Part shown: positions 3,302-59,443 of the stretch, in pieces
Numbering within the stretch: the first letter of the stretch is position 1
Layout of the letters: each line of letters starts with the position of its first letter
IMG/VR virus record: IMGVR_UViG_3300042923_000569
Coordinates: 124,001 to 188,000 of that record
Length of the DNA: 64,000 bases
Reading direction: 5' to 3' (one strand)
Made by a program: the position numbers and the translations under genes
Notes under the pieces: model-generated
The model's database searches: none
Told to the model about the DNA's origin: nothing
What the model saw: the letters and a program-made list of their open reading frames with translations, nothing else

Positions 3302-3327
3302 TAAAAAAGCCCTGAACAAGTCAGGGC
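3302..3327 (-). terminator. intrinsic terminator
   Basis: GCCCUGA-CUUGU-UCAGGGC plus U-tract. Confidence 0.85.
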
Positions 3328-3338
3328 GATTATTAGTT

Positions 3339-4028: not shown

Positions 4029-4067
4029 TAGTAAATCTCCTAAAATTTAAGGGAGTAATCTTTAATG

Positions 4068-4075
4068 TATTTATA
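4068..4075 (-). promoter_or_regulatory. T4-type late promoter TATAAATA
   Basis: Exact match upstream of the tube gene; the TAAATA core also precedes the sheath (~6843), neck (8670), 3254, i-spanin, ferritin-like, 38953 and Ig genes. Confidence 0.75.
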
Positions 4076-4109
4076 AACTTTCGAAGCTTGTCCGTGCATT
4101 AGTACAAAT

Positions 4110-4139
4110 AAAAAAAAAGGAGCCAATAGGCTCCTTTTT
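4110..4139 (-). terminator. intrinsic terminator after the sheath gene
   Basis: AGGAGCC-UAUU-GGCUCCU plus U-tract. Confidence 0.85.
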
Positions 4140-4140
4140 A

Positions 4141-6795
4141 TTATGAAGTTAAACTGTTTTCCAAACGGATTGGAATATAGATGAAGTTGATTGAACGAGT
4201 CGGAACAAGTGCAATATCCATCCACAATTCATTTGCGTCGATACGAGAAGTTGTGTTATTTGATTCATCACAAACTACTAGGAAGTCATAAAGACCATTT
4301 AGTTGAACAATTTCAGCTAGGAAGTTGTTAACAACTGAAGTGAACTCTTGACGAGTACTTGCTGTGTTCAAACGGAATAAGAACGGTTCAGCAAGAATTG
4401 CTAGTTGAGTACGGATGTATACAACAAGACGAGCAACGTTAACACGACTTAATGCAGAACTATCATCAGCAGCTAGTGTTTTATCACCATATACTAGAAG
4501 TCCACGGTTAGGACGCATTGCAATTGGGTTAATCTTGTTAACGTACATAGTGTCACGTTGACCTTGATTATATACTACTGGAGCATATTCACTTTCGTCA
4601 TTAATGTAACCTACAGATGCCGCATTTGTTACAACACCACGTTGTGTACCTGCTGGTGGATACCAAACATAACTTACGCTATCGCTATAAGCATATGTAC
4701 GCATCGCTACAGTACTACCAGGAACTGCAACTTCAGAACCATCAACGTTTGTACCTAAACACCATCCCATATACTGTGCCGCATATGAATAAGCAGTAGT
4801 ACGACCTACATCACCATTACTTGCAGCGTTGTTAGCATTGGTCGCCCAAGCTTGAACATCTGTAGCATTTGGTGCTAAACGTGCAGGAACATCAGTTACG
4901 ATGAAAGCAGTTTCTTTACGATCAGTATTAAGGGTAACTAGTTCGTCAAGTAGTTCAACATATCCAGGAGCACTCATTAGGTTGAATTGGATACTTTCAG
5001 CACGAATATCTTCGTTACTTACTACAACAGATGCTAGAGCTTCAACGATAATTTGACGTTGTGCTGCACGACCGAATAGGCCAGAACCATCTAGAGCTAC
5101 ACCACTTGCAACAGTCCAAACACCATCTTTCATCACTTTAACAACACCTTCAGTTGAACCCAAGTCCACTGCAAGCATTCCATTTTGATATAGTTCTGCA
5201 CTTGGAACATCACCAGTAGTGAAGTCTTCAAAGATTAGACCATTTAGTGTACTTTGGTCAGTACTATCAAGCTTAGTCCAAACACCACCTACGTTACGAT
5301 AGAATACATAACCATCGATGCCTTGTGATAGTGGTTGTACCCAAAAATCACGGTCAGCAGCAGGTTCATCTAACTGAACATACATGTTAGTTGTTGGGTC
5401 GATTAGATCCCAAGTTTCAGTAGAAACGTTAGCAACATATAATTTCACATCTAGTGAATCAGAGTTACTGAAGTTATACCAGTAAGTACCATTAGCTGCT
5501 TTAGCAGTTGGTGTACTTGAATCGACACGTAAATTTGCAACATTAACTAATGAATAGTTGCTGCTATCTACGGTTAGTTTTGCTAGTTCAACAGAACTAA
5601 AAATTTGTTGTCCAGAAGCAAGTGTTTTAAAACTGTAACCATTTTTATTAGTAACGATTAAAGAGTTAGTACCTGTAAAGGTAAATCCTGCGTTAATTAG
5701 GTCTGAACTTTTGTTAAGGTTAGTAATTAAAGATGCAACGTTAACAATCTCACCAGATTTAACTGCAACAACAGTTACTGATTTATTTAAGTACTTGATA
5801 GTTAGTGAACCATCAGCAGTAGCTACTGTACCAGCAGACTGACCAATTGGTGTTGCACCAGCACTGATTGCTGCGTCAGAACCAGACTGACGATAAAGTG
5901 AGAAGCTTTTGCTATCTTCATCAAATAGAGCACCGAAATATGTGTTACCGAAAGTACCAGATTTAGCTTCAATTTCATAGAAACTATTACCTGTCCAAAC
6001 ATTTACTTCAGTCCATACGGAAGTTAGTGAAGCGAAACGTTTTAGAACAAAGCGAGTACCAAAATAGGTAGAACCATTTTTAGTATAACCATCACGAATC
6101 CAAACATTACCTGCTTCGATTGTAGAACCGGTTGGAACTTTGTTGATTGGTGATAGATAAGTTTCAACTTGAACTAGACCAACTGCTTCGTATTTGTACA
6201 TAAGCATTTGACCAGTACTTGGAATATGACGTAGTACTAGGTCGTCTACATTTAATCCAGTGGTGATAACATCTTCAATTCTTTCGTTACTTACGATTGT
6301 TACTGGTTTAACAGCCCAATCATAGAAACTTGTTGGGTTTGCAATCTTAGCAACATATGCTTCGATTTGCGTTGCACTTGTGTCTAACCACAATGTACCG
6401 TTAGACACTGGACCAGTTGGCTCAGTTCCTGATGGTGCAAGTTGTGCTAGATCGATATCTGCACGAACAACGTATGCACGGTTTGCAATACCCATATAGC
6501 TATATAGAGCATGTAAACCATATTCGTTAAGTTCGTCGCCTTGAACTACAGAACCATTACTTGATTGAAATATTGGTGATCCGTAAGTTTCAAGAGCATT
6601 TCTTTGAGATGTAATAAGTTTAAGTGTACCTGCGTTAGCTTTAGTAGTACCGGTAGCAACTGAAGTGCTTCCAGTTACAAGCTTGTCTTGTGCAGTTGCT
6701 ATGAAAAACAAAGGCACGGTTCCGTTAGCACTTGTAGCACTAATAGTTTCATCGGTAACTGTTACACTAACACCAGGTGATTGTAAATCAGCCAT
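4141..6795 (-). CDS. tail sheath protein (gp18-like)
   Basis: 884 aa; N-terminal LQSPGVSVTVTDE; C-terminal WYPPAGTQRG, YGDKTL, LSRVNVARL, FLVVCDESNNT, INFIYIP motifs. Confidence 0.93.
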   Translation of the reverse strand: MADLQSPGVSVTVTDETISATSANGTVPLFFIATAQDKLVTGSTSVATGTTKANAGTLKLITSQRNALETYGSPIFQSSNGSVVQGDELNEYGLHALYSYMGIANRAYVVRADIDLAQLAPSGTEPTGPVSNGTLWLDTSATQIEAYVAKIANPTSFYDWAVKPVTIVSNERIEDVITTGLNVDDLVLRHIPSTGQMLMYKYEAVGLVQVETYLSPINKVPTGSTIEAGNVWIRDGYTKNGSTYFGTRFVLKRFASLTSVWTEVNVWTGNSFYEIEAKSGTFGNTYFGALFDEDSKSFSLYRQSGSDAAISAGATPIGQSAGTVATADGSLTIKYLNKSVTVVAVKSGEIVNVASLITNLNKSSDLINAGFTFTGTNSLIVTNKNGYSFKTLASGQQIFSSVELAKLTVDSSNYSLVNVANLRVDSSTPTAKAANGTYWYNFSNSDSLDVKLYVANVSTETWDLIDPTTNMYVQLDEPAADRDFWVQPLSQGIDGYVFYRNVGGVWTKLDSTDQSTLNGLIFEDFTTGDVPSAELYQNGMLAVDLGSTEGVVKVMKDGVWTVASGVALDGSGLFGRAAQRQIIVEALASVVVSNEDIRAESIQFNLMSAPGYVELLDELVTLNTDRKETAFIVTDVPARLAPNATDVQAWATNANNAASNGDVGRTTAYSYAAQYMGWCLGTNVDGSEVAVPGSTVAMRTYAYSDSVSYVWYPPAGTQRGVVTNAASVGYINDESEYAPVVYNQGQRDTMYVNKINPIAMRPNRGLLVYGDKTLAADDSSALSRVNVARLVVYIRTQLAILAEPFLFRLNTASTRQEFTSVVNNFLAEIVQLNGLYDFLVVCDESNNTTSRIDANELWMDIALVPTRSINFIYIPIRLENSLTS

Positions 6796-16044: not shown

Positions 16045-17559
16045 TTAACCTAGTACTTGATAGCGTGGACTATCAATAGTACGTAACATTACTTGTACTG
16101 GATCTACATCCTCACCACTTAGTACTGCTTCTAATACACTTGGGCTGAATCCACTTACTAGTGCAACACCTGCGGTGTCAAACTTAACTGGATTGTTACC
16201 TGGACGTGCATTTAGATTCCAGAATACTACGGTTGGTAGTTCATATCCTGCACTTTCAAAGTCTGCTTTAGCAACTTCATATGCTGTACCATTCCAACCA
16301 CCATTACGAGCGTTAAACTCCATATCAGTTAGTACAATTAGGTTCTTTGGCATTTCGTCTGCTGGTACTTGTTGCTGAACACATACGCGTAGAATTTCTT
16401 TAAAAGCCAATTCAATGTTTGTGCTACCAGACCAGTACTGATTGCCCTGATAACGCTCAAGATCAAACTTCTTCTCAGCAATATTCGAACCTTTAAGTTC
16501 AAAGATTTGTGGACGAGTACTGAAGTTTAAGAATAGATCTTTGAAAGCACCTTCTTGTTTATCAGCAATGTACAAACCTAATGAAATAGCAACATCCATA
16601 CATGTCATACTGGTTGAACCAGCAGAAGTACCCATAGAGCCAGAGGTATCTACCATTGGGATTGATTTAGAATCACCCATGAAGTTACGTAAAGCTTCCC
16701 ATTGTGCCACAGCTAGTGCAGTACTTTCGGTGTTATAACGATTAAGCTTAGTGGTAATATCATATGGATACAATGCACCAGCATTTACCTTAGCTTCACC
16801 TTTTGCAAGAGATGCTAGATATTCACGATAACGACCTTCATCATGTTTCATGAATGCTGGTAGGTAACGTGAACTAGCAACTGATGGTAGTTTACCATAA
16901 TCAATTTCAGACCATTCACTTGCACACATTTTCTGTTCAACGGTGTTGCTCATTGAAGATAGTAGTTTGCGGTACTGACGTTCATTGATATTCATCACAG
17001 CCATTAAATCTCGTGCAATTTTGTTGTTACTTGCACGGTTTTGGTTTGCTACGGTATTCATGTCAACTTTGCCTTGTGCGTTCTTTTTGAACTTATAGAC
17101 GCGAGGCATCCATTTAGCACATAGACCATTACCGGACTTTAGTGCTTCCGCAATAGTCTGGTACGCAAGAGTTTTGGACTCTGGATTTTTAAAGATTAAC
17201 AGATCGTCCCAACGACCGAATTCTGCAAGTACAGGGATAATACGTAAAACTTCTTCTGGATGTTTAGACTCAACATACTTTAGTAATTCGCGTGGGGTAT
17301 TACGTTCACCAGCACCACCGCGAATATCCCTAGCCCAAAGGATCATCTGCAATGCTAATGTTGAATTAGCTGCATATGCCGCGTCAAAAGATGCTTTGTA
17401 CGCGTTGATGTTTTTGTTACGTAGAGAACCAATCATAAAGAACAGATCTACTAACGGATTTAGGGTACTTTTTAAGGATTCCCCACCATTCGCGGTGCGA
17501 GAGCGGTTATCAGATACTGTGGTGTTTAAATTGTTTACTGCGTTTTTAAATGCTGACAT
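16045..17559 (-). CDS. DUF2828-type vWA-domain protein (Ro60/TROVE-like architecture)
   Basis: WARDIRGGAGER, GRWDDLL, AKWMPR; MIDAS DTSGSM; LTDMEF; VFWNL; LVSGFS. Confidence 0.82.
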   Translation of the reverse strand: MSAFKNAVNNLNTTVSDNRSRTANGGESLKSTLNPLVDLFFMIGSLRNKNINAYKASFDAAYAANSTLALQMILWARDIRGGAGERNTPRELLKYVESKHPEEVLRIIPVLAEFGRWDDLLIFKNPESKTLAYQTIAEALKSGNGLCAKWMPRVYKFKKNAQGKVDMNTVANQNRASNNKIARDLMAVMNINERQYRKLLSSMSNTVEQKMCASEWSEIDYGKLPSVASSRYLPAFMKHDEGRYREYLASLAKGEAKVNAGALYPYDITTKLNRYNTESTALAVAQWEALRNFMGDSKSIPMVDTSGSMGTSAGSTSMTCMDVAISLGLYIADKQEGAFKDLFLNFSTRPQIFELKGSNIAEKKFDLERYQGNQYWSGSTNIELAFKEILRVCVQQQVPADEMPKNLIVLTDMEFNARNGGWNGTAYEVAKADFESAGYELPTVVFWNLNARPGNNPVKFDTAGVALVSGFSPSVLEAVLSGEDVDPVQVMLRTIDSPRYQVLG

Positions 17560-17722: not shown

Positions 17723-18988
17723 TTAATCTTCCGACTTTAGTAGATACTTGTTGTTAATAACTTTAAAGTGAACAGTACTGCCATTTACTTTTACAGTGCT
17801 TTTATATACATCACCTTCTGCGATAGGGTGAGTAATACTCGCATGATCAGCAGATGCTAGTGCTTCTTTAATAGATTCAAATTCTTTAAAGAAATAAACA
17901 ATATCACCTTGTGGAACCGTAGTAACACCTAGTGCAGCAGTAATTTCTAGGAAATCTGCATCATCTAAGAAGTTTTGATTATCGATATCCCAAATACGGA
18001 AACAATAGAACTGATGTTCTTCTAGCTGTTCGCGGTTACCCTGAATACCCGGTCCCATACATTCACCTTGCAAAGCAAGCTGGCGATCATACTTTTCGCA
18101 GTACTCTTTGAGACGTGCTGGAATATCATCTTTTAGTGCAGCTTTCCAGAATGCAGTACTTTCATCGAACTTCAATGCAAGATTGCGTGAGCAAACTACT
18201 ACTTGAGATTCCTGCCATTGGAACGGATAAGGTTTAACTTCAAGTACTTTAAGTTCTTGTAGTTCTTCATCCCACTCAACGACTTCATCATCAACTTTCT
18301 CAACAAAGAAATCTGGATTATTAAAGTACGCGATAGTCTGGCTAGAACCATCTAGTTTTAGAGACTTACGGAATGGAACATCCTGCATAGTCTGGCTAAA
18401 TTTACCAAATACGTTCTGAATACGATCTTCATCAGTTTTTGGAACTACTAGTGGGAAGTTGCCAGCAACTTTAGCTTTACCGGCACCAGTACCACCATTA
18501 CGTTCATCTGGACGTTCGTACTTAGTAACGTTTAAGTACTGCTCAATACCATGACGATTTTCTTCAAGATCACGAAGAATATCTTTTGCATTACCCATAA
18601 TAGTTTCAGCACTTGGCTGAAAGCAATACCTTACATTAGAATTAATACGATAGAAGAAATCTGCAAATGCAATTACTGGAAGTGCAAGTCCCTGGGAAAG
18701 TTGTTTCCTGAGCTTGATTGATTTCAACCGAATACGTTCAACACCATGTTCATCAGTTTTAGTTCCATTCTTAGAAAGGAAAGAAAAACGAGGATCATTT
18801 GCCGGAAGGAATGAATCAATCTCAAAGAATACACAGTAATCGCCGGGTGCAAATTCACCCTTTTTGATTACTACCTGCCAACCATCAATAGTTGCAACTT
18901 CAATTGCATCTGCACCATCAATAGGATTAACTTCTAGTACTTTGCGAATAGTTACTAGTTTGCGGCCTTCAGTTACTAACTCTGTCAT
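17723..18988 (-). CDS. RNA ligase, DRB0094/Rnl2-like family
   Basis: RKLVTIRKV, KLRKQLSQGL, KTDEDRIQN, KLDGSS (motif I), QGECMGPGIQGN, EGDVYK, FKVINNKYLL; start placed at MTELV. Confidence 0.9.
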   Translation of the reverse strand: MTELVTEGRKLVTIRKVLEVNPIDGADAIEVATIDGWQVVIKKGEFAPGDYCVFFEIDSFLPANDPRFSFLSKNGTKTDEHGVERIRLKSIKLRKQLSQGLALPVIAFADFFYRINSNVRYCFQPSAETIMGNAKDILRDLEENRHGIEQYLNVTKYERPDERNGGTGAGKAKVAGNFPLVVPKTDEDRIQNVFGKFSQTMQDVPFRKSLKLDGSSQTIAYFNNPDFFVEKVDDEVVEWDEELQELKVLEVKPYPFQWQESQVVVCSRNLALKFDESTAFWKAALKDDIPARLKEYCEKYDRQLALQGECMGPGIQGNREQLEEHQFYCFRIWDIDNQNFLDDADFLEITAALGVTTVPQGDIVYFFKEFESIKEALASADHASITHPIAEGDVYKSTVKVNGSTVHFKVINNKYLLKSED

Positions 18989-19005
18989 TATTTTTCTCTT
19001 TTTAA

Positions 19006-19335
19006 TTATTTTGTAGGAACTCGACGGTTCCACTTTTGCATTACTTCTTCCATTGAATCACCAATCAAAGACGCACCACAACCAAATTCACTTTCAAGAC
19101 AATTAAATGTCCAGTACATTCCACGTTCGGTAATATCTTTTTCTGAAACAAGTTGTAATGGAGAATGATGTGAATGCTTAATATCTAAATCTTCCCCAAA
19201 GCAATGAATATCCAATGGCGGGCATTTATACCAATGCATTCCCGTTGGATGTAAACTATCATGCAAGTTGTAGTGTCCAGGTTGGTTTCCACAAAACGGA
19301 CACGGCTTTATTTCACCTTTATAATGATGTTCCAT
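19006..19335 (-). CDS. Lar-like (restriction alleviation) zinc-ribbon protein
   Basis: IKPCPFCG...CGAS...EEVMQKWNRR. Confidence 0.5.
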   Translation of the reverse strand: MEHHYKGEIKPCPFCGNQPGHYNLHDSLHPTGMHWYKCPPLDIHCFGEDLDIKHSHHSPLQLVSEKDITERGMYWTFNCLESEFGCGASLIGDSMEEVMQKWNRRVPTK

Positions 19336-51468: not shown

Positions 51469-51711
51469 TTATTCCTTATATTTTGAACACAGTTGTCTTA
51501 ACTTCCTATTCAATTCTTCCGATGTACTGGCTGTAATTGAACCTATCTTTTTTGATTCAGATATTGTTCCCATTCGCACATCGAATTTATTATTATCAAA
51601 TGAATCAACAAACACGTACTTATTACTTGTGGTTGATTTAAATGAAGCAGAGTTATGTTCAATGCACATATCAAATTTAAACATTATTTTCTCAATTAAA
51701 AAGGGGAACAT
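51469..51711 (-). CDS. hypothetical protein
   Basis: 80-aa ORF. Confidence 0.55.
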   Translation of the reverse strand: MFPFLIEKIMFKFDMCIEHNSASFKSTTSNKYVFVDSFDNNKFDVRMGTISESKKIGSITASTSEELNRKLRQLCSKYKE

Positions 51712-51727
51712 AAAGTTCCCCTAACTG

Positions 51728-53155
51728 TTATAGATTTTCTTCTGCGAATGCAGCTAGAGGTGAACGTACTACACCTTCTAATTCAATGATACGACAACCT
51801 TCCCAATCTTTGAACTTTTCAGTTACATAAGTCAAACCACTATTAGTAGGACTGATGAACTTATTATCAATCTGAGATAAGTTACCCATGATGATCACTT
51901 TACAGTTTTCACCAGCACGAGTTAAAATAGTCTTTGCTTGAGCTGGCGTAATGTTCTGGAATTCATCAACAATCAAAATTGTATTAATGAAACTACGACC
52001 ACGAACAAAGTTCAATGCTTTAAACTGGAAGACATTACGTTTCATAATTTCTTCAATTGAACCTTGTGGATTTGCATCATCTTTATGCAAGTACTCTAAT
52101 GCATCAACTGCTGCACCACAGAATGGCATAACTTTTTCCATCTCTGAACCAGGTAAGAAACCAATTTCTTCAAATTGTGAATCCTGAGTTTTGGAGAAGA
52201 TAATGCGGTCATATTTCTTCTTCTCTAGAATTAACTCTAAAGAAGTTGCGATAGCGATTAATGTTTTACCTGTACCTGCTGAACCAAGAAGAATTGTAAT
52301 ATGTACATCTTTGTCCATGATACTGTTAATTGCCATTGCTTGCTGAATGTTCTTGGCTTTAATACCCCAAACTTTACGCGACAATGCTTTAGTCTGACCA
52401 ATGTCGTTTAAACAAACCATATCTCGGTCATCGTCATGTTCTAGTACTGAAGCATAACCTTCAAATACAAACAGACCATCAGCTTCATCATATAGATAAT
52501 CGCCAATACAAATATTATCTGGAAGAAGATGTTTGATATTTTCTTCTGGAATCATTTGTAGTAGCTTGTGACTATCCTGATTAGCATAGACTGTGCCACC
52601 GATTTGATCCCATAGTTTACCAGTAATTTCATGGTGTCCAGTATGGATTAGATCCGAATCTTCGATTGTTACATCATGACGATAATCCTGAACTTCTACA
52701 CCATATGCTAGTGCCTTGATACGCATGTTAATATCACGTGTTACAAGTACAGCTTGGGATAGTCGAGCAACTAGAATAATCTTGTCATCAGGTACAGTAC
52801 TTTTTACTAGAGTATCAAGCTTGTCATCATAGTTTTCACTTAGATGTGCAATTGCTTGAAGTTCCTCAACAGTTAGTACAAATAACTTTGTTTCGGGATT
52901 AATGTGAGGGTGAGTTTTGAAAATTTCAACACCAGTAGTTGAAATTTCTTCATGTGTTGCGTTTTCAAGAATAGTACTAATATTGCGGATTGCAACACGA
53001 GCATCACGTGAAATATCAACTTTACGACTCTTAATGGAATCTAATTCTTCAAGTACAGTGAACGGAAGAATTACATGTGCTCCATCAAATGCTAGGATTG
53101 CATGTGGATCACCAAGAATCACGTTTGTGTCAAGAACATATTTTTTCATAAACAT
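51728..53155 (-). CDS. phoH: PIN-PhoH (PhoH2-type) ATPase/RNase
   Basis: N-terminal PIN YVLDTNV; GSAGTGKT; RGRS; IVDEFQN. Confidence 0.93.
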   Translation of the reverse strand: MFMKKYVLDTNVILGDPHAILAFDGAHVILPFTVLEELDSIKSRKVDISRDARVAIRNISTILENATHEEISTTGVEIFKTHPHINPETKLFVLTVEELQAIAHLSENYDDKLDTLVKSTVPDDKIILVARLSQAVLVTRDINMRIKALAYGVEVQDYRHDVTIEDSDLIHTGHHEITGKLWDQIGGTVYANQDSHKLLQMIPEENIKHLLPDNICIGDYLYDEADGLFVFEGYASVLEHDDDRDMVCLNDIGQTKALSRKVWGIKAKNIQQAMAINSIMDKDVHITILLGSAGTGKTLIAIATSLELILEKKKYDRIIFSKTQDSQFEEIGFLPGSEMEKVMPFCGAAVDALEYLHKDDANPQGSIEEIMKRNVFQFKALNFVRGRSFINTILIVDEFQNITPAQAKTILTRAGENCKVIIMGNLSQIDNKFISPTNSGLTYVTEKFKDWEGCRIIELEGVVRSPLAAFAEENL

Positions 53156-53220
53156 CCTTTTTTTTGTTGAGTGTTAAAACACTTTGTTTTCCTAACAGTA
53201 TTTAATGTTCCTTTAAACTG

Positions 53221-53520
53221 TTAGTTTGAGCTGGGTTCGTAATTAACGTAGCAGCGATTACCTTTCGCTTCTTCGTACCAGCATTCTTGATAAACCAATT
53301 GGCCTATGCTAACTGGTTTATCGGTAGTACCATACTTCAGTTCATTGTTTTTGTCAGTGTATTGGTATGAACATTCACTCCCTTTACACTGACCCGTTGC
53401 AACAACCCGACCAACGTTATACGTCACATTGGTATGTTTACCACTTGGTATTTGCATTAACCCATACATGAATGATGTAAATACTACCGCATAGATTACA
53501 GACCAAATGAGACGTTTCAT
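53221..53520 (-). CDS. membrane-anchored hypothetical protein
   Basis: N-terminal TM helix; Cys-containing beta domain. Confidence 0.65.
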   Translation of the reverse strand: MKRLIWSVIYAVVFTSFMYGLMQIPSGKHTNVTYNVGRVVATGQCKGSECSYQYTDKNNELKYGTTDKPVSIGQLVYQECWYEEAKGNRCYVNYEPSSN

Positions 53521-53523
53521 AAC

Positions 53524-54417
53524 TTACAAACTCCGAATAAAATTAAAGGCATTATCTAAGTACGAAGAAATGTTCTTCGCACCAACAGGATTAGCACTAT
53601 GGACATTATATCCAAATACTTTTGCAATCTGTCGATCCATCATATAATCGATAAGATACTTACAGAATGTATAACCAGTTTCTTCATTTTCATTATCGGT
53701 ATCACCCAAATCATGGTCAAAAGAAACAAATTCAGGTAAACCATGTTGTTCAACGTACTTAACAGCTTCCTGATGAGTACGACAAACAACGAAACCTTCA
53801 CCTGGATAGTACTGTTCAACATCACGCAAATCATCCAAAAACATTTTGTATGACTGCTGTGTTTCACCAGTATAATCAATAAGAAGATTATTATCTTCTA
53901 CAAGTTTAATAAGTTCTTTCTTGGAGGTTCCTACGAAGTTCTGCTCCATAAGAACATTCCAGCCACATTCTACTTTACTCGCCTTAAGATAACGACAAAT
54001 ATGTAGTAAATTCACTCCAGCATTTTCAGCAGGAAAATGTTCACCGGTTACTGCGTTATTACGAATTTCCAGAAGTTCTTCATAAGATACCTCTAAAGAA
54101 AATGCATGATTGTGTACGTTAGTTGCCATGTTTTTATAGCTAACTAATGGTTTTAAACGTTCGATAGGAAGGTCATAGTTAATTTCTTCCTTAGCTTCTC
54201 GAACTACGGCAATTTCTAAACTTGGGTCATCTTTTTCTACTAAACCACCAACTGCACCTAATAAACCATCGAACCGTAATTCTGCAAGTACTAGACTTAC
54301 GTTAGGAATATCATTGTATGGATAATTTTTATATGGATTACAGTTCTTAGAAAAGATCCATACAAAGGCACAATCATAACGATTAGAGCGGGTGCCGAAA
54401 GGAATTTCCTGGTACAT
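53524..54417 (-). CDS. NUDT16-like Nudix hydrolase fused to a cyclic-phosphate-processing receiver-like domain
   Basis: LRFDGLLGAVGGLVE...SLEIAVVREAKEEI resembles NUDT16; C-terminal MFLDDLR...VSFDHDLG...VHSANPVG. Confidence 0.78.
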   Translation of the reverse strand: MYQEIPFGTRSNRYDCAFVWIFSKNCNPYKNYPYNDIPNVSLVLAELRFDGLLGAVGGLVEKDDPSLEIAVVREAKEEINYDLPIERLKPLVSYKNMATNVHNHAFSLEVSYEELLEIRNNAVTGEHFPAENAGVNLLHICRYLKASKVECGWNVLMEQNFVGTSKKELIKLVEDNNLLIDYTGETQQSYKMFLDDLRDVEQYYPGEGFVVCRTHQEAVKYVEQHGLPEFVSFDHDLGDTDNENEETGYTFCKYLIDYMMDRQIAKVFGYNVHSANPVGAKNISSYLDNAFNFIRSL

Positions 54418-54425
54418 ATATTGCC

Positions 54426-55199
54426 TTAATTATTTGTTGACATACGAGCAGTTACGTAGTCATTTAATGTTCCAAGAACATCACCAATTGGACTGTAAAG
54501 ATTGTAACTGAAATGATCGTCTTTATCATGTGGTTCTGGATTAATATTAACAGTTTGTGAAGCTGTTGCTAATCCTGCATATACTGACCACGGAATTACA
54601 CTATCAGATGAACCGATAATAATGAAAGTATCGCGTGCATTTGCACTATCAAGTACTTTATAAAGTTCGTTATAGATTGGTTTACGAACACCATTGTCAA
54701 ACCAGAATGTTTCACCAAACATTACAATATTAGGTTTAGAAACAATACCTGGGGTTGGTGTAAATTCAGTATAACCAATATCAGTCACTTCATAATCTTC
54801 AGAGTTTACTGAAAACGGACTAACTACCTCAGTTAAACGACCATGAACATGCATTGCAGATCCACCAGCACGTTCAGCTAAGTCATCAACATTAGCAGTA
54901 ATATGAATTACTCGGTCATCACCATATAGTTTCTGCATACGTTCAATGAAATAATGTCCTGGGTTTGGTTCAAAATTTTGAAGGCCAACACGCATTTTAT
55001 TATAAAAGTTATGTACTGCATCGTAGTGAGTCATGAAGTGTGCAATATTACAAACAATATCAACACTTACGTTATCCCACAATCCATCACCTGCTGCATC
55101 ACGGAAAGTAGGGATACCAGATTCTTTTGACAGACCCGCTCCAGTACAGAAAATCAGTCGTGGCGTTTCATTATTTTGCAAAAAACTATTGAGATTCAT
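54426..55199 (-). CDS. sirtuin (Sir2/CobB family) NAD+-dependent enzyme
   Basis: TGAGLSKESGIPTFRD, HITANVDDLAERAG, HVHG, PNIVMFGE, IIGSS, INP. Confidence 0.93.
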   Translation of the reverse strand: MNLNSFLQNNETPRLIFCTGAGLSKESGIPTFRDAAGDGLWDNVSVDIVCNIAHFMTHYDAVHNFYNKMRVGLQNFEPNPGHYFIERMQKLYGDDRVIHITANVDDLAERAGGSAMHVHGRLTEVVSPFSVNSEDYEVTDIGYTEFTPTPGIVSKPNIVMFGETFWFDNGVRKPIYNELYKVLDSANARDTFIIIGSSDSVIPWSVYAGLATASQTVNINPEPHDKDDHFSYNLYSPIGDVLGTLNDYVTARMSTNN

Positions 55200-55207
55200 T
55201 GTTTACC

Positions 55208-55426
55208 TTAAAGGTGTGAAAAGTAAAGTCGGCAACCACAGTTTGGACATTGTGGTTCCTTAATATAATATCCGTCAGTACCGGGTACGGAACGCGGAGC
55301 ATCTTTTATTACATAAACTTTGAAGCACTTAAAACAAGTAACTTCTTTATCGGCTTGGGGATGATCATCAACCCAATCACCACTATAAAGCCATTTCTGA
55401 TGTTCCGTTAAATCCCCATACTTCAT
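55208..55426 (-). CDS. small zinc-ribbon protein
   Basis: CFKC...CPNCG. Confidence 0.6.
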   Translation of the reverse strand: MKYGDLTEHQKWLYSGDWVDDHPQADKEVTCFKCFKVYVIKDAPRSVPGTDGYYIKEPQCPNCGCRLYFSHL

Positions 55427-55437
55427 TATAAGCTCAC

Positions 55438-55884
55438 TTAAATTGTAGTCTTATTATATTCATTACCAAAGATTAGTTCTTCTGGTAATACGCCAAGTTT
55501 ATAAATTAGTTCAATTAAATCTTCGTCAGTATCTTTTGGTTGGTACACAATACTCATATGGCATTTGTAACCGGGAAATTTATGTGTAAATCCAGCATTA
55601 AGTAATTCTTTATGACGCTGTTCAATTTCAGGTGAATCAAGAAGTAGTACTATTGCTTCCCATTCCCCACCGGGTTTTCCCAACCTTTCAATTCCAGTAA
55701 TCTTCGCTTTATATGTACTATCATTTTGAAGTAAATTTATTTGAGGATTGCTTTCATCTTGCATTAAGGTAACATGAAATTTAGCTGCTGTCAAGCAATC
55801 AATGCCCGCTAGTTTAAATATTTTTCTGATTTCTTTAGCCTGATCAATATCAAGCTTTAGGCTTACAAATCCTTTTCCAGCCAT
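55438..55884 (-). CDS. acb1: anti-CBASS 2H phosphodiesterase (Acb1 / T4 gp57B-like)
   Basis: FHVTL...IVLLLDSPEIEQRH...GFTHKFPGYKCHMSIVY aligns by eye with T4 Acb1 IHST...LVLDSEYLRCRH...GATHDFDDYTPHITLSY. Confidence 0.82.
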   Translation of the reverse strand: MAGKGFVSLKLDIDQAKEIRKIFKLAGIDCLTAAKFHVTLMQDESNPQINLLQNDSTYKAKITGIERLGKPGGEWEAIVLLLDSPEIEQRHKELLNAGFTHKFPGYKCHMSIVYQPKDTDEDLIELIYKLGVLPEELIFGNEYNKTTI

Positions 55885-55896
55885 GAGTAATATCCT

Positions 55897-56091
55897 TTAC
55901 ATAGTTAAAATTAAATAACCTAACAATACTACAAGGATACCTGCAATAATTGCAAGTAAAACTGCACTAACTACATATAGTACTTTTTTATTTTTAGTAA
56001 ATGTAGAACGCTTAGCTTTATATTCAGAGAATGTAAGCCAAAGTATAATTACATACGTAATAACAGATACAACTAGCATTGTGGTTAACAT
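55897..56091 (-). CDS. small membrane protein
   Basis: Two TM segments. Confidence 0.65.
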   Translation of the reverse strand: MLTTMLVVSVITYVIILWLTFSEYKAKRSTFTKNKKVLYVVSAVLLAIIAGILVVLLGYLILTM

Positions 56092-56112
56092 ATTTAATAG
56101 TCTCGTCTAAGT

Positions 56113-56138
56113 TAAAAAGAAGGGGGCATAAGCCCCCT
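56113..56138 (-). terminator. intrinsic terminator after nampt
   Basis: AGGGGGC-UUAU-GCCCCCU plus U-rich tail. Confidence 0.8.
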
Positions 56139-56143
56139 AAAAA

Positions 56144-57628
56144 TTACAAACCTTTGTTTGCACGTTCACGTACTTCATCGAAGTTACTGAGATTCATAAT
56201 CTCACCATTAACGTACACATCAACCATCATATCACGTAGGAATGGGTTGACTTCTTGTAGTTCAATACGCTCTGCAATAATCTTGTGAGTATTAGTACAC
56301 TCATAAGTAGTGACACGACCACGTAAAGAACGCTTGCCTACATCAGTGATCGGATCTTTGAATAAATCTTCCCAAACACCAGTGTTTAGCTGTTGTGCTG
56401 AACCTTTCATTGCGAAGCTGTAAGTATCGCGACCTTTTTCTGGATGTACTAACTTACCACCCATACCAAATACGATGTTAGAAAGACAAATCTTTTTAGC
56501 TTCAATATTTGCAACAATCTGACGGATACTGTCTTCGTTGATACCATCACCCTGAATCACTCCAATGAATGAAGGTAATTCTTTATAACCATTTGCGTTT
56601 ACAGTAGAACCAAACTTCTCCATCAAAATCTCAGTGATTTCAATTGGCATTGTTAGTGGATCACCGCTATCTGGACGAAGAACTAACTTAGCTCCAGGGC
56701 AAAGTGCTGCGATTTCCATAATGGTAGCTTTCAAACGAGTACCAATGTATTCGCGGGTAAAACGATATGCATCATAGGTATCAATCACTACTGATACGAT
56801 TGGTGGAACACCAATTGAACCTTTAGCAATATATGCACGTACTTTCATTTCCCACAAACGAACCATCTTAACTGCCATATTAAAGTCGTCGCGTTTGTCT
56901 GCGTCTGAGTTAGAACATGTTGCACTATGCTCACTCGCAGTAACTGAACTCAAATATGCATTAGTTGTGTGGTAGTATTGTTTAATGTAACGGTTAGCAC
57001 TTAGACAATCAGAACCGTTGAACAATGCCGCATGTGCCATACCTGCAATAATTGCAGATTCGAAGCTTGAAGCTCCGCGATCACCGAAGTTATGCAAGTG
57101 ATAGTCCACAAAGCGAGAGCCAGTATGACGCTCCATTGTATCAGCTAAGAATTCTTTAATGCTACGTGCATTACTAGCAACTGTAGTTGGGAACCAAACA
57201 CCACGCTGAAGCTGAGTTTCAATGTAGCTTGCAATTACACAAACACGCGGATCAGTACTGAAAGAACGTACTAATGGACTACCAACAGGAACTAACGTAC
57301 CTTCTGGAATTGCACGAATATGTAATGGAATTTTACCTCCATGTACTTCTACAATGTGTTCCCAAAAACCGCGATCAAAATCATCGCCACGTTGTTCAGT
57401 TTCTAGCTGTGCTTCGTCAATGTCATCAGTAGTGATGCTAATATCTAAGTACTCTTGTAGATAGTACTGTAGACCCATCATCACAACATGTGTTGCGTAC
57501 TTACTTGGTTTACGTGCAATGATATTTGATTCAAGAGCTACAACACCCTCTTTCATCATAAAACCGTGACCAGTTTTGTACGAATCGACATTTAAAATAA
57601 AGTTTACATTTTTGTTAATTTTGTTCAT
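56144..57628 (-). CDS. nadV: nicotinamide phosphoribosyltransferase (Nampt/NadV)
   Basis: NVDSYK, HNFGDRG, ASEHS, VVIDTYD, LVLRPDSG, VIQGDG, VFGMGG, KDPITDVGKRS. Confidence 0.95.
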   Translation of the reverse strand: MNKINKNVNFILNVDSYKTGHGFMMKEGVVALESNIIARKPSKYATHVVMMGLQYYLQEYLDISITTDDIDEAQLETEQRGDDFDRGFWEHIVEVHGGKIPLHIRAIPEGTLVPVGSPLVRSFSTDPRVCVIASYIETQLQRGVWFPTTVASNARSIKEFLADTMERHTGSRFVDYHLHNFGDRGASSFESAIIAGMAHAALFNGSDCLSANRYIKQYYHTTNAYLSSVTASEHSATCSNSDADKRDDFNMAVKMVRLWEMKVRAYIAKGSIGVPPIVSVVIDTYDAYRFTREYIGTRLKATIMEIAALCPGAKLVLRPDSGDPLTMPIEITEILMEKFGSTVNANGYKELPSFIGVIQGDGINEDSIRQIVANIEAKKICLSNIVFGMGGKLVHPEKGRDTYSFAMKGSAQQLNTGVWEDLFKDPITDVGKRSLRGRVTTYECTNTHKIIAERIELQEVNPFLRDMMVDVYVNGEIMNLSNFDEVRERANKGL

Positions 57629-57674
57629 ACTAAGACTCCCTTAGATATTAAGTGTTGAAAGCTACATCGCTTTC
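57629..57674 (-). promoter_or_regulatory. two-hairpin leader of nampt (NAD leader, copy 1)
   Basis: GAAAGC-GAUGUA-GCUUUC, N12, CUAAG-GGAGU-CUUAG, U, AUG. Confidence 0.72.
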
Positions 57675-57686
57675 GATTATTTTGGT

Positions 57687-58202
57687 TTATACCAAATTCT
57701 GTACTAAAATTTTTGGAATTAATGCCATTAGATTGTGTGGTTCAAACATATACTCACCAAATCTTACGTAAGAATACATTGCATATGGATTAATCTTTTC
57801 AATTGCGATTTCATCAATAGAAAAAGCATATGTATCACCAAACTCATCATAAGTAGTGAATAACATTTCATCATCGACAAAAATTATATCGCTTCGTCGA
57901 GGTTTTGCGATGTATACAAAAGCACTATCTGAAAATGCAAAGTAAACCTGCATAAATTTATGTTCTTTACTTACTTCAAGTGAGTTGTAAACACCATATG
58001 TTCTAATAGCAAATATTTTATTATCTTCATTATCTGCCGGTTGATTAACTATCATCTGCAACAGATATGAAATTGGTTCTATGTGTGTAATACCAGTTGG
58101 TAGTTTATATTCAGACAAAGATAACTTTTGTAAAAAAGTTTGCTGATTATCTGAAATGTACTTCATTTCATGATAAAAACTATCTGGCTGGCAGTACAAC
58201 AT
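57687..58202 (-). CDS. hypothetical protein between the two NAD salvage genes
   Basis: 171-aa ORF. Confidence 0.6.
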   Translation of the reverse strand: MLYCQPDSFYHEMKYISDNQQTFLQKLSLSEYKLPTGITHIEPISYLLQMIVNQPADNEDNKIFAIRTYGVYNSLEVSKEHKFMQVYFAFSDSAFVYIAKPRRSDIIFVDDEMLFTTYDEFGDTYAFSIDEIAIEKINPYAMYSYVRFGEYMFEPHNLMALIPKILVQNLV

Positions 58203-58245
58203 AAAAACCTCTTAATTAAAAGGAGTACCGAAGTACTCCGATAAC

Positions 58246-59361
58246 TTAAAGAATACCTAAGAAAGTATCAATAATACTTAAATGATCTTCAAAGAACTTA
58301 TCACGGTTCTGAACTAATTCACCAAGTGGCATCCAGAATGCTTTTTCAGCATCATCTGCACCTTTAACTTTAGGTAATGTATTATCCTGAAGTTGAATGT
58401 ATGCACATTTAGTAATGATACGCCAGCGTTGGGAACGATTGAAATCACCAAACTCCATACTTTCACGGATTGAACCTTCAAGTACTTTCATTGGAACATC
58501 AATCTTTGTTTCTTCTTTTAATTCACGTAAAGCAGTTTGAATTTGATCTTTATCCTGCCAAGCGTCAAAGAACCCACCGGGTAGAGCATATAAACCTTTA
58601 CCTGGGAAAGTGCGGCGTTTAACAAGAAGAATGTGACCTGCACTGATTACCATTGCGTCACCCGTTAAGAACGGAATGTTGTTATATGGTAAACGTTCAT
58701 TCATCTCTGCACGATAACGTTGAACAAAGTTAAACTCGCCAATTAGATTATCAAAAATTACTGGTTTAGTTTGCATGAACTTACCAAGAAATTCTTGTGT
58801 TTCTTCTGGTAATGATTCAGGAATCTGTTTAGTACTGAAAAATTGATTACGAACTTCGGTACTATTAATCGTAATAGGATTTGATTCTGCGTCCTTCTCA
58901 CGATATTGCTGAGGAATACCAGCTTGCGATTTCTTAACTTCACCAATGAAATCCTGTTGCCATTGTGGGAAGAAGTTAAGATAAAAAGTACTTTCATCTG
59001 CTTCTTTCTGACAACCAGTAATTACAATGTTATCGCTTGAAGTAACGGACTTAACTTGTTCGTGTACTTCCATCAACCATTTGCTGTTGTTATATACATA
59101 ATCGTGGATTGGTAAGATATTAATCTTAACCGAACGCCCTTTAGCCCACTCTTCTTGAACTAAACGATTAGACATAGCATCCAGTACCTGACGGCGTTCT
59201 TCAAACGAAAACGGATTTTTTGAATCACGTGCAAGCTCCGAACTACCAACAAGAATTACCAAACGGTCTGCATTTTCTAATGCATGTTTAATGGTTGCTT
59301 CATGACCTGTGTGTGCCATTTGGAAACGACCAATATACACATATACTTTTTCTTTACTCAT
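58246..59361 (-). CDS. nadM: bifunctional NMN adenylyltransferase / ADP-ribose pyrophosphatase (NadM-Nudix)
   Basis: YIGRFQMAHTGH (HxGH), KNPFSFEER, NSTEVR; Nudix LPGGF...ALRELKEET; DDAEKAFW. Confidence 0.94.
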   Translation of the reverse strand: MSKEKVYVYIGRFQMAHTGHEATIKHALENADRLVILVGSSELARDSKNPFSFEERRQVLDAMSNRLVQEEWAKGRSVKINILPIHDYVYNNSKWLMEVHEQVKSVTSSDNIVITGCQKEADESTFYLNFFPQWQQDFIGEVKKSQAGIPQQYREKDAESNPITINSTEVRNQFFSTKQIPESLPEETQEFLGKFMQTKPVIFDNLIGEFNFVQRYRAEMNERLPYNNIPFLTGDAMVISAGHILLVKRRTFPGKGLYALPGGFFDAWQDKDQIQTALRELKEETKIDVPMKVLEGSIRESMEFGDFNRSQRWRIITKCAYIQLQDNTLPKVKGADDAEKAFWMPLGELVQNRDKFFEDHLSIIDTFLGIL

Positions 59362-59407
59362 TCTAAGACTCCCTTAGCTATTTGTTATTCAAGGCTACAT
59401 CACCTTG
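59362..59407 (-). promoter_or_regulatory. two-hairpin leader of nadM-Nudix (NAD leader, copy 2)
   Basis: CAAGGU-GAUGUA-GCCUUG, N12, CUAAG-GGAGU-CUUAG, A, AUG. Confidence 0.72.
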
Positions 59408-59414
59408 TATTCAT

Positions 59415-59443
59415 ATTATATCACAAAAAAGTTCAATGTTTCA
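59415..59443 (-). promoter_or_regulatory. early-type promoter TGAAAC-N17-TATAAT
   Basis: aaaaTGAAACattgaacttttttgTGaTATAAT, upstream of nadM-Nudix. Confidence 0.78.

What the first reader, a model, noticed from the sequence alone, without database searches (positions are those of the whole stretch)
53524..59361. Compact NAD+ / cyclic-nucleotide counter-defence island
Seen in sequence: NUDT16-like Nudix-receiver fusion, Sir2, Acb1-like 2H protein, Nampt and NadM-Nudix lie within 6 kb. Established: phage Nampt plus NMNAT rebuild NAD+ (KVP40 salvage pathway; the NARP2 counter-defence against NAD-depleting systems such as Thoeris and DSR), and Acb1 degrades CBASS cyclic oligonucleotides. The ADPR pyrophosphatase domain yields ribose-5-phosphate, which host Prs could turn into PRPP for Nampt. 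Inference: one locus handles signal destruction, ADPR recycling and NAD+ resynthesis. The interleaved uncharacterised ORFs (55208 zinc ribbon, 55897 membrane protein, 57687) are strong candidates for new anti-defence factors.
Basis: partly seen in the sequence, partly recalled or inferred. Interest (0 to 1): 0.68.

Follow-up and report, generated by a model that had tools for sequence, protein, structure and literature searches.

The report
Phage NAD+ salvage and sirtuin locus
A jumbo phage carries the known two-enzyme NAD+ rebuilding pathway beside a sirtuin/phosphoesterase operon, a gene set already described in its relatives; the new point is that both NAD+ genes sit behind a conserved, apparently undescribed RNA leader, which also precedes the same genes in many other phages and bacteria.

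Summary
The window is a 357,873-bp GAP32/CBB-like (Rak2-like) jumbo phage.

The gene content is not new. Nampt plus NadM-Nudix is a NARP2-type pathway. The Sir2 + 2H + Nudix-cREC + PIN neighbourhood was described for Serratia phage BF (Iyer et al. 2022) as a predicted NAD+-using RNA-repair/ADPr-processing system. The conserved block runs further than the finding, to the PIN-PhoH2 gene at 51728.

The modules separate: phage 121Q keeps the Sir2 module without NARP2. The 2H protein belongs to the Acb1 family by Pfam and by fold, but its substrate is untested.

Of the small ORFs, the zinc ribbon and the 64-aa membrane protein are not shown to be co-conserved with the pathway. The 171-aa ORF does travel with NARP2 and has a weak HAM1/Maf-like fold.

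Found here: Nampt and NadM each carry a two-hairpin 5' leader, and an identical 15-mer hides the ribosome-binding site. It occurs only at these two genes in the genome. Related leaders with strong covariation precede nadM/nadV in many phages and bacteria. Rfam has no match. It is a riboswitch or translational-operator candidate.

The parts
51702..51722 (-). Terminator-like hairpin after PIN-PhoH2; 3' end of the Sir2 operon
51728..53155 (-).
   Evidence: Pfam PIN_4 and PhoH. NCBIfam PhoH2 scores below its cut-off. Syntenic in GAP32, CBB, 121Q, PHA46 and RaK2.
53221..53520 (-). 99-aa membrane-anchored, Cys-rich protein; the small ORF best co-conserved with the Sir2 module
   Evidence: phrog_14661. 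Found in 70 phage records, all Rak2-like jumbo phages, beside the Nudix/cREC genes where annotation is shown.
53524..54417 (-). NUDT16-like Nudix hydrolase fused to a cREC (cyclic-phosphate-processing receiver) domain, 297 aa
   Evidence: One fused gene in the Mimasvirus-like group; two separate genes in 121Q, RaK2 and PHA46.
54426..55199 (-). CobB-like sirtuin lacking the zinc-binding cysteines, 257 aa
   Evidence: Pfam SIR2. Best solved relatives are CobB deacylases, E 2.5e-24. Homologues in 1010 phage records.
55208..55426 (-). 72-aa phage zinc-ribbon protein
   Evidence: PF23903. Found in 230 phage records, mostly rV5-like and RB49-like; not adjacent to Sir2 where both positions are listed.
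55438..55884 (-). 2H phosphoesterase of the Acb1 family, 148 aa
   Evidence: The CBB orthologue was detected in virions: 7 peptides, 60% coverage (PMC5259590).
55897..56091 (-). 64-aa protein with two hydrophobic segments; first gene of the Sir2 operon
   Evidence: Translation; phrog_35006.
56121..56138 (-). G+C-rich terminator-like hairpin after Nampt; separates NARP2 from the Sir2 operon
   Evidence: z = -3.6
56144..57628 (-). Nicotinamide phosphoribosyltransferase (Nampt/NadV), 494 aa
57626..57686 (-). Structured 5' leader of Nampt: hairpin 1 at 57657-57674, ribosome-binding-site hairpin at 57630-57644, start codon at 57626-57628
   Evidence: (67.4 bits)
57687..58202 (-). 171-aa protein of unknown function embedded in NARP2; weak HAM1/Maf-like fold
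58222..58239 (-). Terminator-like hairpin after NadM, also present in GAP32 and CBB
58246..59361 (-). Bifunctional NMN adenylyltransferase / Nudix ADP-ribose pyrophosphatase (NadM/NatV-like), 371 aa
59359..59419 (-). Structured 5' leader of NadM: hairpin 1 at 59390-59407, ribosome-binding-site hairpin at 59363-59377, start codon at 59359-59361; a -10-like TATAAT lies at 59415-59420
   Evidence: (68.0 bits)

Best explanation
The locus consists of two adjacent units that share one pool of NAD+, nicotinamide and ADP-ribose.

Unit 1 (56144-59419) is a NARP2-type NAD+ reconstitution pathway:
- Nampt converts nicotinamide plus host PRPP into NMN.
- NadM adenylates NMN to NAD+.
- The Nudix domain of NadM splits ADP-ribose into AMP and ribose-5-phosphate.
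- Each of the two genes has its own two-hairpin 5' leader. The second hairpin holds the ribosome-binding site, so translation is probably off by default and is switched on by a ligand or a protein (inferred).
- A fast-evolving 171-aa protein sits between the two genes.

Unit 2 (51728-56091) is one tightly packed operon:
- Gene order: membrane protein, Acb1-family 2H phosphoesterase, zinc ribbon, CobB-like sirtuin, NUDT16-like Nudix-cREC fusion, membrane protein, PIN-PhoH2.
- The sirtuin spends NAD+ and releases nicotinamide plus an ADP-ribose derivative (inferred).
- The 2H and cREC domains open cyclic phosphates, and the Nudix domain cuts the pyrophosphate (inferred; this is the prediction of Iyer et al. 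2022).
- Unit 1 recycles the nicotinamide, and it also protects the phage when host defences destroy NAD+.

Domains, motifs, synteny and the RNA structure are shown here. All enzyme substrates and the regulatory logic are inferred.
For: - Domains and catalytic motifs are present.
- NARP2 has been validated experimentally for the KVP40 homologues.
- The genome encodes no Adps/Prs.
- Iyer et al. describe the same sirtuin neighbourhood in Serratia phage BF, a relative found.
- Operon structure: gaps of 3-12 nt between genes from 56091 to 53221, and terminator-like hairpins after NadM, Nampt and PhoH2.
- NARP2 lies next to the Sir2 module in the Mimasvirus-like phages, PHA46 and RaK2.
- An RNA ligase is encoded in the window at 17723-19033.
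- Leader: the 15-mer CTAAGGGAGTCTTAG occurs only at the two start sites in 357,873 bp.
- Model R2 scores the two leaders 68 and 67 bits; the next best hit in the genome scores 14 bits.
- The related motif shows covariation of 0.71 against 0.22 in shuffles, and 0.78 against 0.22 in an independent set from cellular genomes.
- In five whole phage genomes the hits lie in the NAD cluster.
Against: - No biochemistry exists for any protein of this phage.
- The two units are separable: 121Q keeps unit 2 without NARP2, and this sirtuin family occurs in about 1000 phage records, including T5- and rV5-like phages. Adjacency may therefore be inherited synteny rather than functional coupling.
- The genome has no KptA, and a KptA-like activity of a sirtuin has never been shown.
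- Hairpin 2 has only five base pairs. A ribosome-binding site inside a hairpin is a common arrangement and may only damp translation.
- The cellular leader sequences were picked with a structure-aware model, which inflates their pairing counts.
Confidence: 0.6

Rival explanations
1. One reading: one integrated counter-defence island. The 2H protein acts as Acb1 and destroys CBASS cyclic oligonucleotides. The Nudix-cREC protein destroys ADP-ribose-derived signals or recycles ADPR. NARP2 rebuilds NAD+. The small ORFs are further anti-defence factors.
For: - Acb1 family membership by Pfam (58.5 bits).
- The closest solved structures are phage Acb1-type enzymes: 9q2g at TM 0.80 and FBB1 Acb1 at TM 0.55.
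- The CBB orthologue is packaged in virions, so it could act at injection.
- There is a precedent for a signal-degrading enzyme encoded beside a NARP operon: RyDEP next to NARP1 (PMC13232231).
- The 171-aa protein evolves fast, 41-51% identity against 73-89% for its neighbours.
Against: - Only 26% identity to T4 Acb1. The Trp74 equivalent is Leu, and the lid with Trp147 and Glu141 cannot be aligned.
- Appr>p cyclic phosphodiesterase and 2'-5' RNA-ligase-like folds score about as well as FBB1 Acb1 (TM 0.57-0.64).
- This view gives Sir2 and PIN-PhoH2 no role.
- RaK2 and 121Q keep the module without the 2H gene at this locus.
- The zinc ribbon is widespread in phages and is not linked to the pathway.
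Confidence: 0.22
2. The sirtuin is a protein deacylase or ADP-ribosyltransferase used for host takeover. The Nudix-cREC and 2H proteins clear O-acyl-ADPR or ADPR by-products, and NARP2 pays the NAD+ bill. No RNA repair is involved.
For: - The closest solved relatives are CobB and Sirt5 deacylases, E 1e-24 to 1e-14, and the catalytic His is intact.
- The closest solved relatives of the Nudix domain are NUDT16 structures. From my own knowledge, not tested here, NUDT16 acts on ADP-ribose conjugates.
Against: - The zinc module typical of deacylases is missing.
- The conserved neighbours are RNA-directed: PIN-PhoH2, and 2H and cREC, which process cyclic phosphates.
Confidence: 0.2
3. The genes are unrelated auxiliary genes that lie together only because Rak2-like phages inherited this gene order. 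The shared leader merely tunes translation of two moderately expressed genes.
For: - The modules are found apart.
- Genes inserted between the modules differ from phage to phage: a 312-aa ORF in GAP32, an HNH endonuclease in RaK2, four ORFs in PHA46.
Against: - The leader is specific to nadM and nadV across phages whose proteins share only 34-40% identity, and also in bacteria. All 59 and all 33 hits lie on the gene strand.
- The loop G-AUAGA-C is nearly invariant while the stems covary.
Confidence: 0.15

Closest known systems
NARP2 of Vibrio phage KVP40 (NadV Nampt + NatV NMNAT/Nudix; Lee et al. 2017; Osterman et al. 2024)
   Same: The same two enzyme families and the same bifunctional NadM-Nudix architecture, and no Adps in the genome.
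   Different: The proteins are distant: the window's NadM shares 36-42% identity with NadM genes on unnamed IMG/VR phage contigs, and it was not compared with KVP40 directly. Here the two genes are split by a 171-aa ORF and each has a structured leader. Models R1 and R2 find no such leader in KVP40. Nampt has Asn where human NAMPT has Asp219.
Sirtuin-centred gene neighbourhood type 1 of Iyer, Burroughs, Anantharaman and Aravind 2022 (Serratia phage BF)
   Same: Sirtuin + 2H + Nudix-cREC fusion + PIN endoRNase in a Rak2-like jumbo phage. BF is a syntenic relative.
   Different: That paper makes a computational prediction of RNA repair. In the passages I read, it does not mention the adjacent NARP2 genes, the leaders or the small ORFs.
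Acb1 of phages T4 and FBB1 (Hobbs et al. 2022) and the Burkholderia phage BCSR5 phosphodiesterase (PDB 9Q2G)
   Same: A small phage 2H fold with an HxT/HxS tetrad. The Phe107 equivalent is conserved. TM is 0.80 to 9Q2G and 0.55 to 7T27.
   Different: Trp74 is replaced by Leu and the lid residues cannot be aligned, so the substrate is unknown. The CBB orthologue is virion-associated.
RyDEP next to NARP1 in mycobacteriophage DyoEdafos (bioRxiv 2026)
   Same: The concept is the same: a signal- or ADPR-processing enzyme encoded beside an NAD+ reconstitution operon.
   Different: The fold differs (RyR domain) and the pathway differs (NARP1). No RyR domain was found in this locus.
NAD+ riboswitches class I (nadA motif) and class II (pnuC motif)
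   Same: A short 5' leader on NAD+-metabolism genes, with the ribosome-binding site sequestered. This comparison is from my own knowledge.
   Different: No Rfam family matches the leader. The architecture is different, and no ligand is known.
KomB, the HAM1-like dITP sensor of the Kongming KomBC NADase
   Same: It is the best structural match of the 171-aa protein in three searches: Z 6.2, and TM 0.53 to a Ham1-SIR2 fusion cluster.
   Different: The scores are within the noise range. The residues at the N-terminal positions I lined up by hand with KomB Asn9 and Lys12 are Pro6 and Phe9, and the family has no invariant acidic residue.

Membership tests
NARP2 (phage NAD+ reconstitution pathway 2) | Nampt-clade phosphoribosyltransferase | tested here: met
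   NAMPT_N + NAPRTase. NF006629 scores 420 bits against a cut-off of 405. Solved NAMPTs match at E 1e-78 to 1e-68, with the His247 and Arg311 equivalents kept and Asp219 replaced by Asn.
NARP2 (phage NAD+ reconstitution pathway 2) | NMN adenylyltransferase encoded in the same genome | tested here: met
   NadM with an HTGH motif plus a Nudix box, 58 nt plus one ORF away from Nampt.
NARP2 (phage NAD+ reconstitution pathway 2) | No Adps (Prs-like) partner, which would indicate NARP1 | tested here: met
   PF13793 is absent from the 357,873-bp genome, while the control genomes all score.
NARP2 (phage NAD+ reconstitution pathway 2) | Restores NAD+ and overcomes NAD+-depleting defence systems | not testable with these tools
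   Known only for the KVP40 genes.
Acb1 (anti-CBASS 2H nuclease) | Pfam PF23474 score above the gathering cut-off | tested here: met
   58.5 bits against 27. It is the only copy in the genome.
Acb1 (anti-CBASS 2H nuclease) | HxT/HxT catalytic tetrad | tested here: met
   H37-V-T39 and H109-M-S111 align with the T4 motifs and are invariant in 12 orthologues.
Acb1 (anti-CBASS 2H nuclease) | Base-stacking residues Tyr12, Trp74, Phe107 and Trp147, Glu141, and the C-terminal lid | tested here: inconclusive
   The Phe107 equivalent is kept. Trp74 aligns with Leu68. The N-terminus and the lid do not align.
Acb1 (anti-CBASS 2H nuclease) | Cleaves 3'3'-cGAMP and other CBASS signals | not testable with these tools
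I found no paper on the closest structure, 9Q2G.
Sirtuin-centred phage RNA-repair neighbourhood (Iyer et al. 2022, type 1) | [quoted passage not shown] | tested here: met
   No Macro domain among the ten ORFs scanned.
Sirtuin-centred phage RNA-repair neighbourhood (Iyer et al. 2022, type 1) | RNA ligase available to seal repaired ends | tested here: met
   An RNA_ligase + PHA02142 OB-fold ORF at window 17723-19033, 35 kb away and not in the operon.
Sirtuin-centred phage RNA-repair neighbourhood (Iyer et al. 2022, type 1) | Sirtuin removes RNA 2'-phosphate, a KptA-like activity | not testable with these tools
   Prediction only. The genome has no KptA.
HAM1/ITPase-Maf superfamily (171-aa ORF) | Shared fold | tested here: inconclusive
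   It is the top family in Foldseek PDB (E 6e-3), VIA-wide (Z 5.1-6.2) and the ESM atlas (TM 0.53), but all scores are below the tools' noise guidance.
HAM1/ITPase-Maf superfamily (171-aa ORF) | NTP-binding Asn/Lys/Glu and a catalytic Asp | tested here: not met
   The invariant residues are M1, L2, C4, P6, F9, Y10, S17, F23, P43, R67, T68, G70 and four more; none is acidic. The match of P6 and F9 to KomB Asn9 and Lys12 rests on my own hand alignment of the N-termini.
Known RNA families (Rfam 15, including the NAD+ riboswitches) | Covariance-model match to the Nampt or NadM leader | tested here: not met
   No hit at the leaders at E <= 10 in the window or at E <= 1 in 12 loci.

The most novel reading that the evidence does not exclude
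The two-hairpin leader is an undescribed riboswitch. Hairpin 1 has a nearly invariant G-AUAGA-C loop (GAUGUAG in Rak2-like phages). Hairpin 2 encloses the ribosome-binding site. The leader is shared by nadM and nadV (Nampt) genes of many phages and bacteria. It would read the state of the NAD+ pool (NAD+, NMN, ADP-ribose or PRPP), so that phages translate their NAD+-rebuilding enzymes only when NAD+ is being destroyed. The 171-aa HAM1-like protein embedded in the phage pathway would be a further nucleotide-binding counter-defence factor.
Probability: 0.3. Interest if true: 0.85.

Novelty: new variant of a known kind. Interest (0 to 1): 0.6.

Why it matters
NAD+ depletion is a common end-point of bacterial immunity, and NARP2 is a known phage answer to it. 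[quoted passage not shown] How the pathway is controlled is not known.

A leader RNA that is specific to nadM and nadV, supported by covariation, and shared by phages and bacteria gives a concrete, testable handle on that control. It is also a candidate new class of regulatory RNA.

The locus also offers defined proteins on which the competing anti-CBASS and RNA-repair readings can be settled by simple assays: the virion-borne Acb1-like 2H protein, the Nudix-cREC fusion, the zinc-less sirtuin and the 171-aa protein.

Tried and rejected
171-aa ORF:
- The word-based homologue search found only one 98%-identical cluster.
- The atlas feature search gave nothing.
- A scan of IMG/VR with the single protein found one locus.
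- The exhaustive search gave only 7 representative clusters.

Sirtuin: I looked for experimental work on the T5-type phage sirtuin and found none. Two paper searches failed on syntax.

2H protein: no paper on the BCSR5 phosphodiesterase is in the library.

Leader RNA:
- I considered a pseudoknot between the hairpin-1 loop (AUAG) and a CUAU in the spacer. I rejected it because variants with AGAGA or AGUGA loops show no matching change in the spacer (by eye).
- I considered the promoter/stem-loop cassettes of T4-type phages. I rejected this because there are only two copies per genome and both are at NAD genes.
- Model R1, built on the AUAGA type, barely detects the Rak2 variant: 22 bits, at the noise level. 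A second model, R2, was therefore built.
- Resemblances of hairpin 2 to CsrA sites and of hairpin 1 to boxB loops are from memory only and were not tested.

Locus: the RyR domain of RyDEP is not present.

Not run: complex prediction (I claim no binding), the look-up of sequencing runs and read laying.

Full report
**What the window is.** The window is bases 124001-188000 of a 357,873-bp virus record with direct terminal repeats, at about 35% G+C. By DNA it matches only the Nampt-NadM stretch of Rak2-like jumbo phages such as Pectobacterium phage CBB and Cronobacter phage GAP32, at about 81-83%. By protein, GAP32 and CBB are the nearest relatives:

| Protein | Identity to nearest relatives |
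|---|---|
| 2H | 80% |
| Nudix-cREC | 78-79% |
| Sir2 | 73% |
| NadM | 85% |
| Nampt | 87-89% |
| 171-aa ORF | 41-51% |

**Check of the observation.**
- 53524-54417 is a NUDT16-like Nudix fused to a cREC domain. Its best solved relatives are human NUDT16 structures, E 5e-10.
- 54426-55199 is a sirtuin. Its best solved relatives are CobB-type deacylases, E 2.5e-24.
- 55438-55884 belongs to the Acb1 family.
- 56144-57628 is Nampt.
- 58246-59361 is NadM-Nudix.
- Catalytic motifs are intact in the translations. The sirtuin lacks the four zinc-binding cysteines of CobB.
- The zinc ribbon (PF23903) and the 64-aa hydrophobic protein are as described. The 171-aa ORF has no Pfam or NCBIfam hit.

**True extent and architecture.**
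- Genes from 56091 to 53221 are separated by only 3-12 nt.
- Terminator-like hairpins follow NadM (58239-58222), Nampt (56138-56121) and PhoH2 (51722-51702).
- I therefore read two units: NARP2 (NadM, the 171-aa ORF, Nampt), and a seven-gene Sir2 operon.

**Synteny**:
- GAP32 and CBB have the same order as the window, plus an extra 312-aa gene.
- PHA46 has NadM, a 180-aa ORF, Nampt, four ORFs, then 2H, Sir2, a 122-aa ORF, Nudix, cREC, the membrane protein and PhoH2.
- RaK2 has NadM, an HNH endonuclease, Nampt, an 88-aa ORF, then Sir2, Nudix, cREC, the membrane protein and PhoH2, with no 2H gene.
- 121Q has Sir2, Nudix, cREC, the membrane protein and PhoH2, but no NARP2 and no 2H gene at this locus.
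- Nudix and cREC are fused only in the Mimasvirus-like group.
- The core of unit 2 is therefore Sir2, Nudix, cREC, the membrane protein and PhoH2. NARP2 is a frequent neighbour that can be lost.

**What is already known.**
- Iyer et al. 2022 (PMC9503650) describe exactly this neighbourhood in Serratia phage BF: sirtuin, 2H, Nudix-cREC fusion and PIN. They predict an NAD+-using RNA-repair system in which the sirtuin acts like KptA, and 2H, cREC and Nudix process ADPr>P.
- Their 2021 jumbo-phage survey (PMC7824862) named the cREC domain and noted NAD+ synthesis genes in jumbo phages.
- The NAD+ genes of GAP32 and CBB carry these functions in their GenBank records, and the 2017 CBB paper discusses them for both phages.
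- NARP2 was defined and validated with the KVP40 genes.
- UniRef already names the orthologues of the 2H protein 'Anti-CBASS protein Acb1'.
- The gene content is therefore a new member of known kinds.

**The Acb1 question.**
- For the Acb1 reading: Pfam membership, the HxT/HxS tetrad and a conserved Phe107 equivalent. An AlphaFold model (pLDDT 82.7) matches the Burkholderia phage BCSR5 phosphodiesterase best (TM 0.80), then FBB1 Acb1 (TM 0.55).
- Against assuming the same substrate: 26% identity to T4 Acb1, Trp74 replaced by Leu, and a lid that cannot be aligned. Appr>p phosphodiesterase folds score about as well as FBB1 Acb1.
- The CBB orthologue was found in purified virions. That fits an enzyme delivered at injection, under either reading.

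**The small ORFs.**
- The zinc ribbon occurs in 230 phage records, mainly rV5-like and RB49-like. It is not next to Sir2 where both positions are listed. It is not co-conserved with the pathway.
- The 64-aa membrane protein matched only phrog_35006, and its wider distribution was not surveyed.
- The 171-aa ORF:
  - It is found by sequence only in 18 records of the Mimasvirus-like clade, always between NadM and Nampt, and in 7 representative clusters out of 1.8 billion proteins.
  - The 180-aa ORF in the same slot of PHA46 is a remote homologue: hhalign probability 92%, E 5e-7. An unnamed 180-aa viral protein in BFVD also matches the model at TM 0.73.
  - Its model is confident (pLDDT 89.9).
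  - Three independent fold searches put HAM1/Maf/ITPase-like domains on top, led by KomB and a Ham1-SIR2 fusion cluster, but with weak scores: Z 6.2, TM 0.36-0.53.
  - The HAM1 nucleotide-binding and catalytic residues are not conserved.
  - I treat it as a NARP2-linked protein of unknown function, possibly nucleotide-binding.

**The leader RNA, which is the new result.** In the window:
- Upstream of both the NadM and the Nampt start codons there is a hairpin with a variable stem and a GAUGUAG loop, then 10-14 A-rich bases, then the identical 15-mer CTAAGGGAGTCTTAG.
- The 15-mer forms a 5-bp hairpin with the ribosome-binding GGAG in its loop, 1-2 nt before the ATG.
- The minimum-energy folds show exactly these two hairpins.
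- The 15-mer occurs nowhere else in the genome, even with one mismatch. About 0.08 matches are expected by chance in the window.
- The same architecture precedes both genes in GAP32, CBB and RaK2, and precedes NadM in PHA46. The stems carry compensatory changes, and RaK2 NadM has the two arms swapped.

In other phages:
- In IMG/VR the exact 15-mer occurs 37 times. The 22 copies followed by a start codon and a long ORF all precede Nampt or NadM homologues, including one whose NadM is only 34% identical.
- Seventy-nine more distant NadM loci mostly carry a related leader: hairpin 1 with the loop G-AUAGA-C, a conserved spacer, then a hairpin around the ribosome-binding site.
- RNAalifold finds 11 pairs, 10 of them with compensatory changes. 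Pairing is 92.8% against 66.3% in shuffles. The covariation score is 0.71 against 0.22, and at most 0.14 for slid controls.
- A model built from these sequences (R1) also finds the leader, in sequences it was not built from, in front of the Nampt gene that follows NadM, and in front of small ORFs that head the operon.
- In five whole phage genomes of 163-300 kb, R1 hits lie in the NAD cluster, apart from two weak ones.
- All 59 hits in the phage loci are on the gene strand.
- A model of the Rak2 variant (R2) scores the window's two leaders at 68 and 67 bits, against 14 bits for the next hit. It finds both leaders in RaK2, only noise in 121Q, and nothing in KVP40.

In cellular genomes:
- The motif is not confined to phages. 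In 80 bacterial and archaeal NadM loci, R1 gives 33 hits, all on the gene strand. Each ends at the start codon of nadM, or at that of the next gene, which is a Nampt wherever I translated it.
- They include large contigs of Cellvibrio, Pseudoalteromonas, Budvicia and Thiothrix.
- An independent fold of 21 of these sequences recovers the same two hairpins, with 12 of 14 pairs compensated and covariation of 0.78 against 0.22.
- Caveat: these sequences were selected with a structure-aware model, which biases the pairing counts upward.

Whether it is known: Rfam 15 has no match, and two literature searches found nothing relevant. The library covers only part of the literature.

**Interpretation.**
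- The leader is most simply a cis-regulatory RNA that controls translation of nadM and nadV.
- Because it is shared by unrelated phages and by several bacterial lineages, a metabolite-sensing riboswitch is a serious possibility. A conserved RNA-binding protein is the alternative. I cannot tell the two apart with these tools.
- For the phage, such control would make sense. [quoted passage not shown]

**Other genome context.** The genome has no KptA and only one Acb1-family gene. It encodes an RNA ligase in the window. Near 332-334 kb it has a NadR-like plus PnuC pair, the composition of the recently described NARP3.

**Verdict.**
- The island itself is already described in relatives.
- The regulatory leader and the NARP2-embedded protein family make it a new variant worth follow-up.

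Noticed in passing
own genome G000 about 332.6-334.5 kb (locus L010: 1486-2295 and 2297-3346, minus strand); outside the window: A PnuC transporter (269 aa) lies next to a NadR-like protein (cytidylyltransferase-like + AAA_28, 349 aa). This is the composition of the NARP3 pathway published in 2026, so this phage appears to carry both NARP2 and a NARP3-like pair. Model R2 finds no leader there.
   Followed up: partly
IMG/VR loci L116, L107, L093 (108-aa ORF) and L086, L118, L124 (118-119-aa ORF): On other phage contigs the same leader motif precedes small ORFs without Pfam hits that sit directly upstream of NadM. They are candidate extra members of the NAD regulon.
   Followed up: partly
Genome-contig loci, e.g. 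L239 (Cellvibrio), L203 (Pseudoalteromonas luteoviolacea), L222 (Budvicia aquatica), L215 and L176 (Thiothrix), L229 (cyanobacterium): The nadM/nadV leader motif (G-AUAGA-C loop plus a hairpin around the ribosome-binding site) occurs in cellular chromosomes as well. It is not phage-specific, and the Rak2-type leader in the window is a derived variant. L030 is a hybrid of the two types.
   Followed up: yes
window 17723-19033 (-) and 16045-17559 (-): An RNA ligase (PHA02142 OB-fold + RNA_ligase) lies next to a DUF2828/DUF7788 protein. A weak Lar-like restriction-alleviation hit is at 19006-19335.
   Followed up: partly
window 56144-57628 (Nampt), motif LHNFGDRG: The position equivalent to Asp219 of human NAMPT is Asn here. 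From my own knowledge, Asp219 is tied to nicotinamide specificity. The bacterial Nampt 7YQO has Asp. Substrate preference may differ.
   Followed up: no
L007 (RaK2) 3099-4124; L002 (GAP32) 4854-5792: The slot between NadM and Nampt holds an HNH endonuclease in RaK2 instead of the 171-aa gene. GAP32 and CBB have an extra 312-aa gene (Aeh1p191-like, no Pfam hit) between 2H and Nampt that the window lacks.
   Followed up: partly
KVP40 record NC_005083 (handle W01): Neither leader model finds a match anywhere in KVP40, the experimentally studied NARP2 phage. Its NAD genes seem to be controlled differently.
   Followed up: partly
window 58203-58245 (-): The hairpin GGAGTAC-TTCG-GTACTCC, followed by a run of T, lies upstream of the 171-aa gene. 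It is conserved almost letter for letter in GAP32 and CBB, although the flanking protein diverges to about 50% identity.
   Followed up: partly
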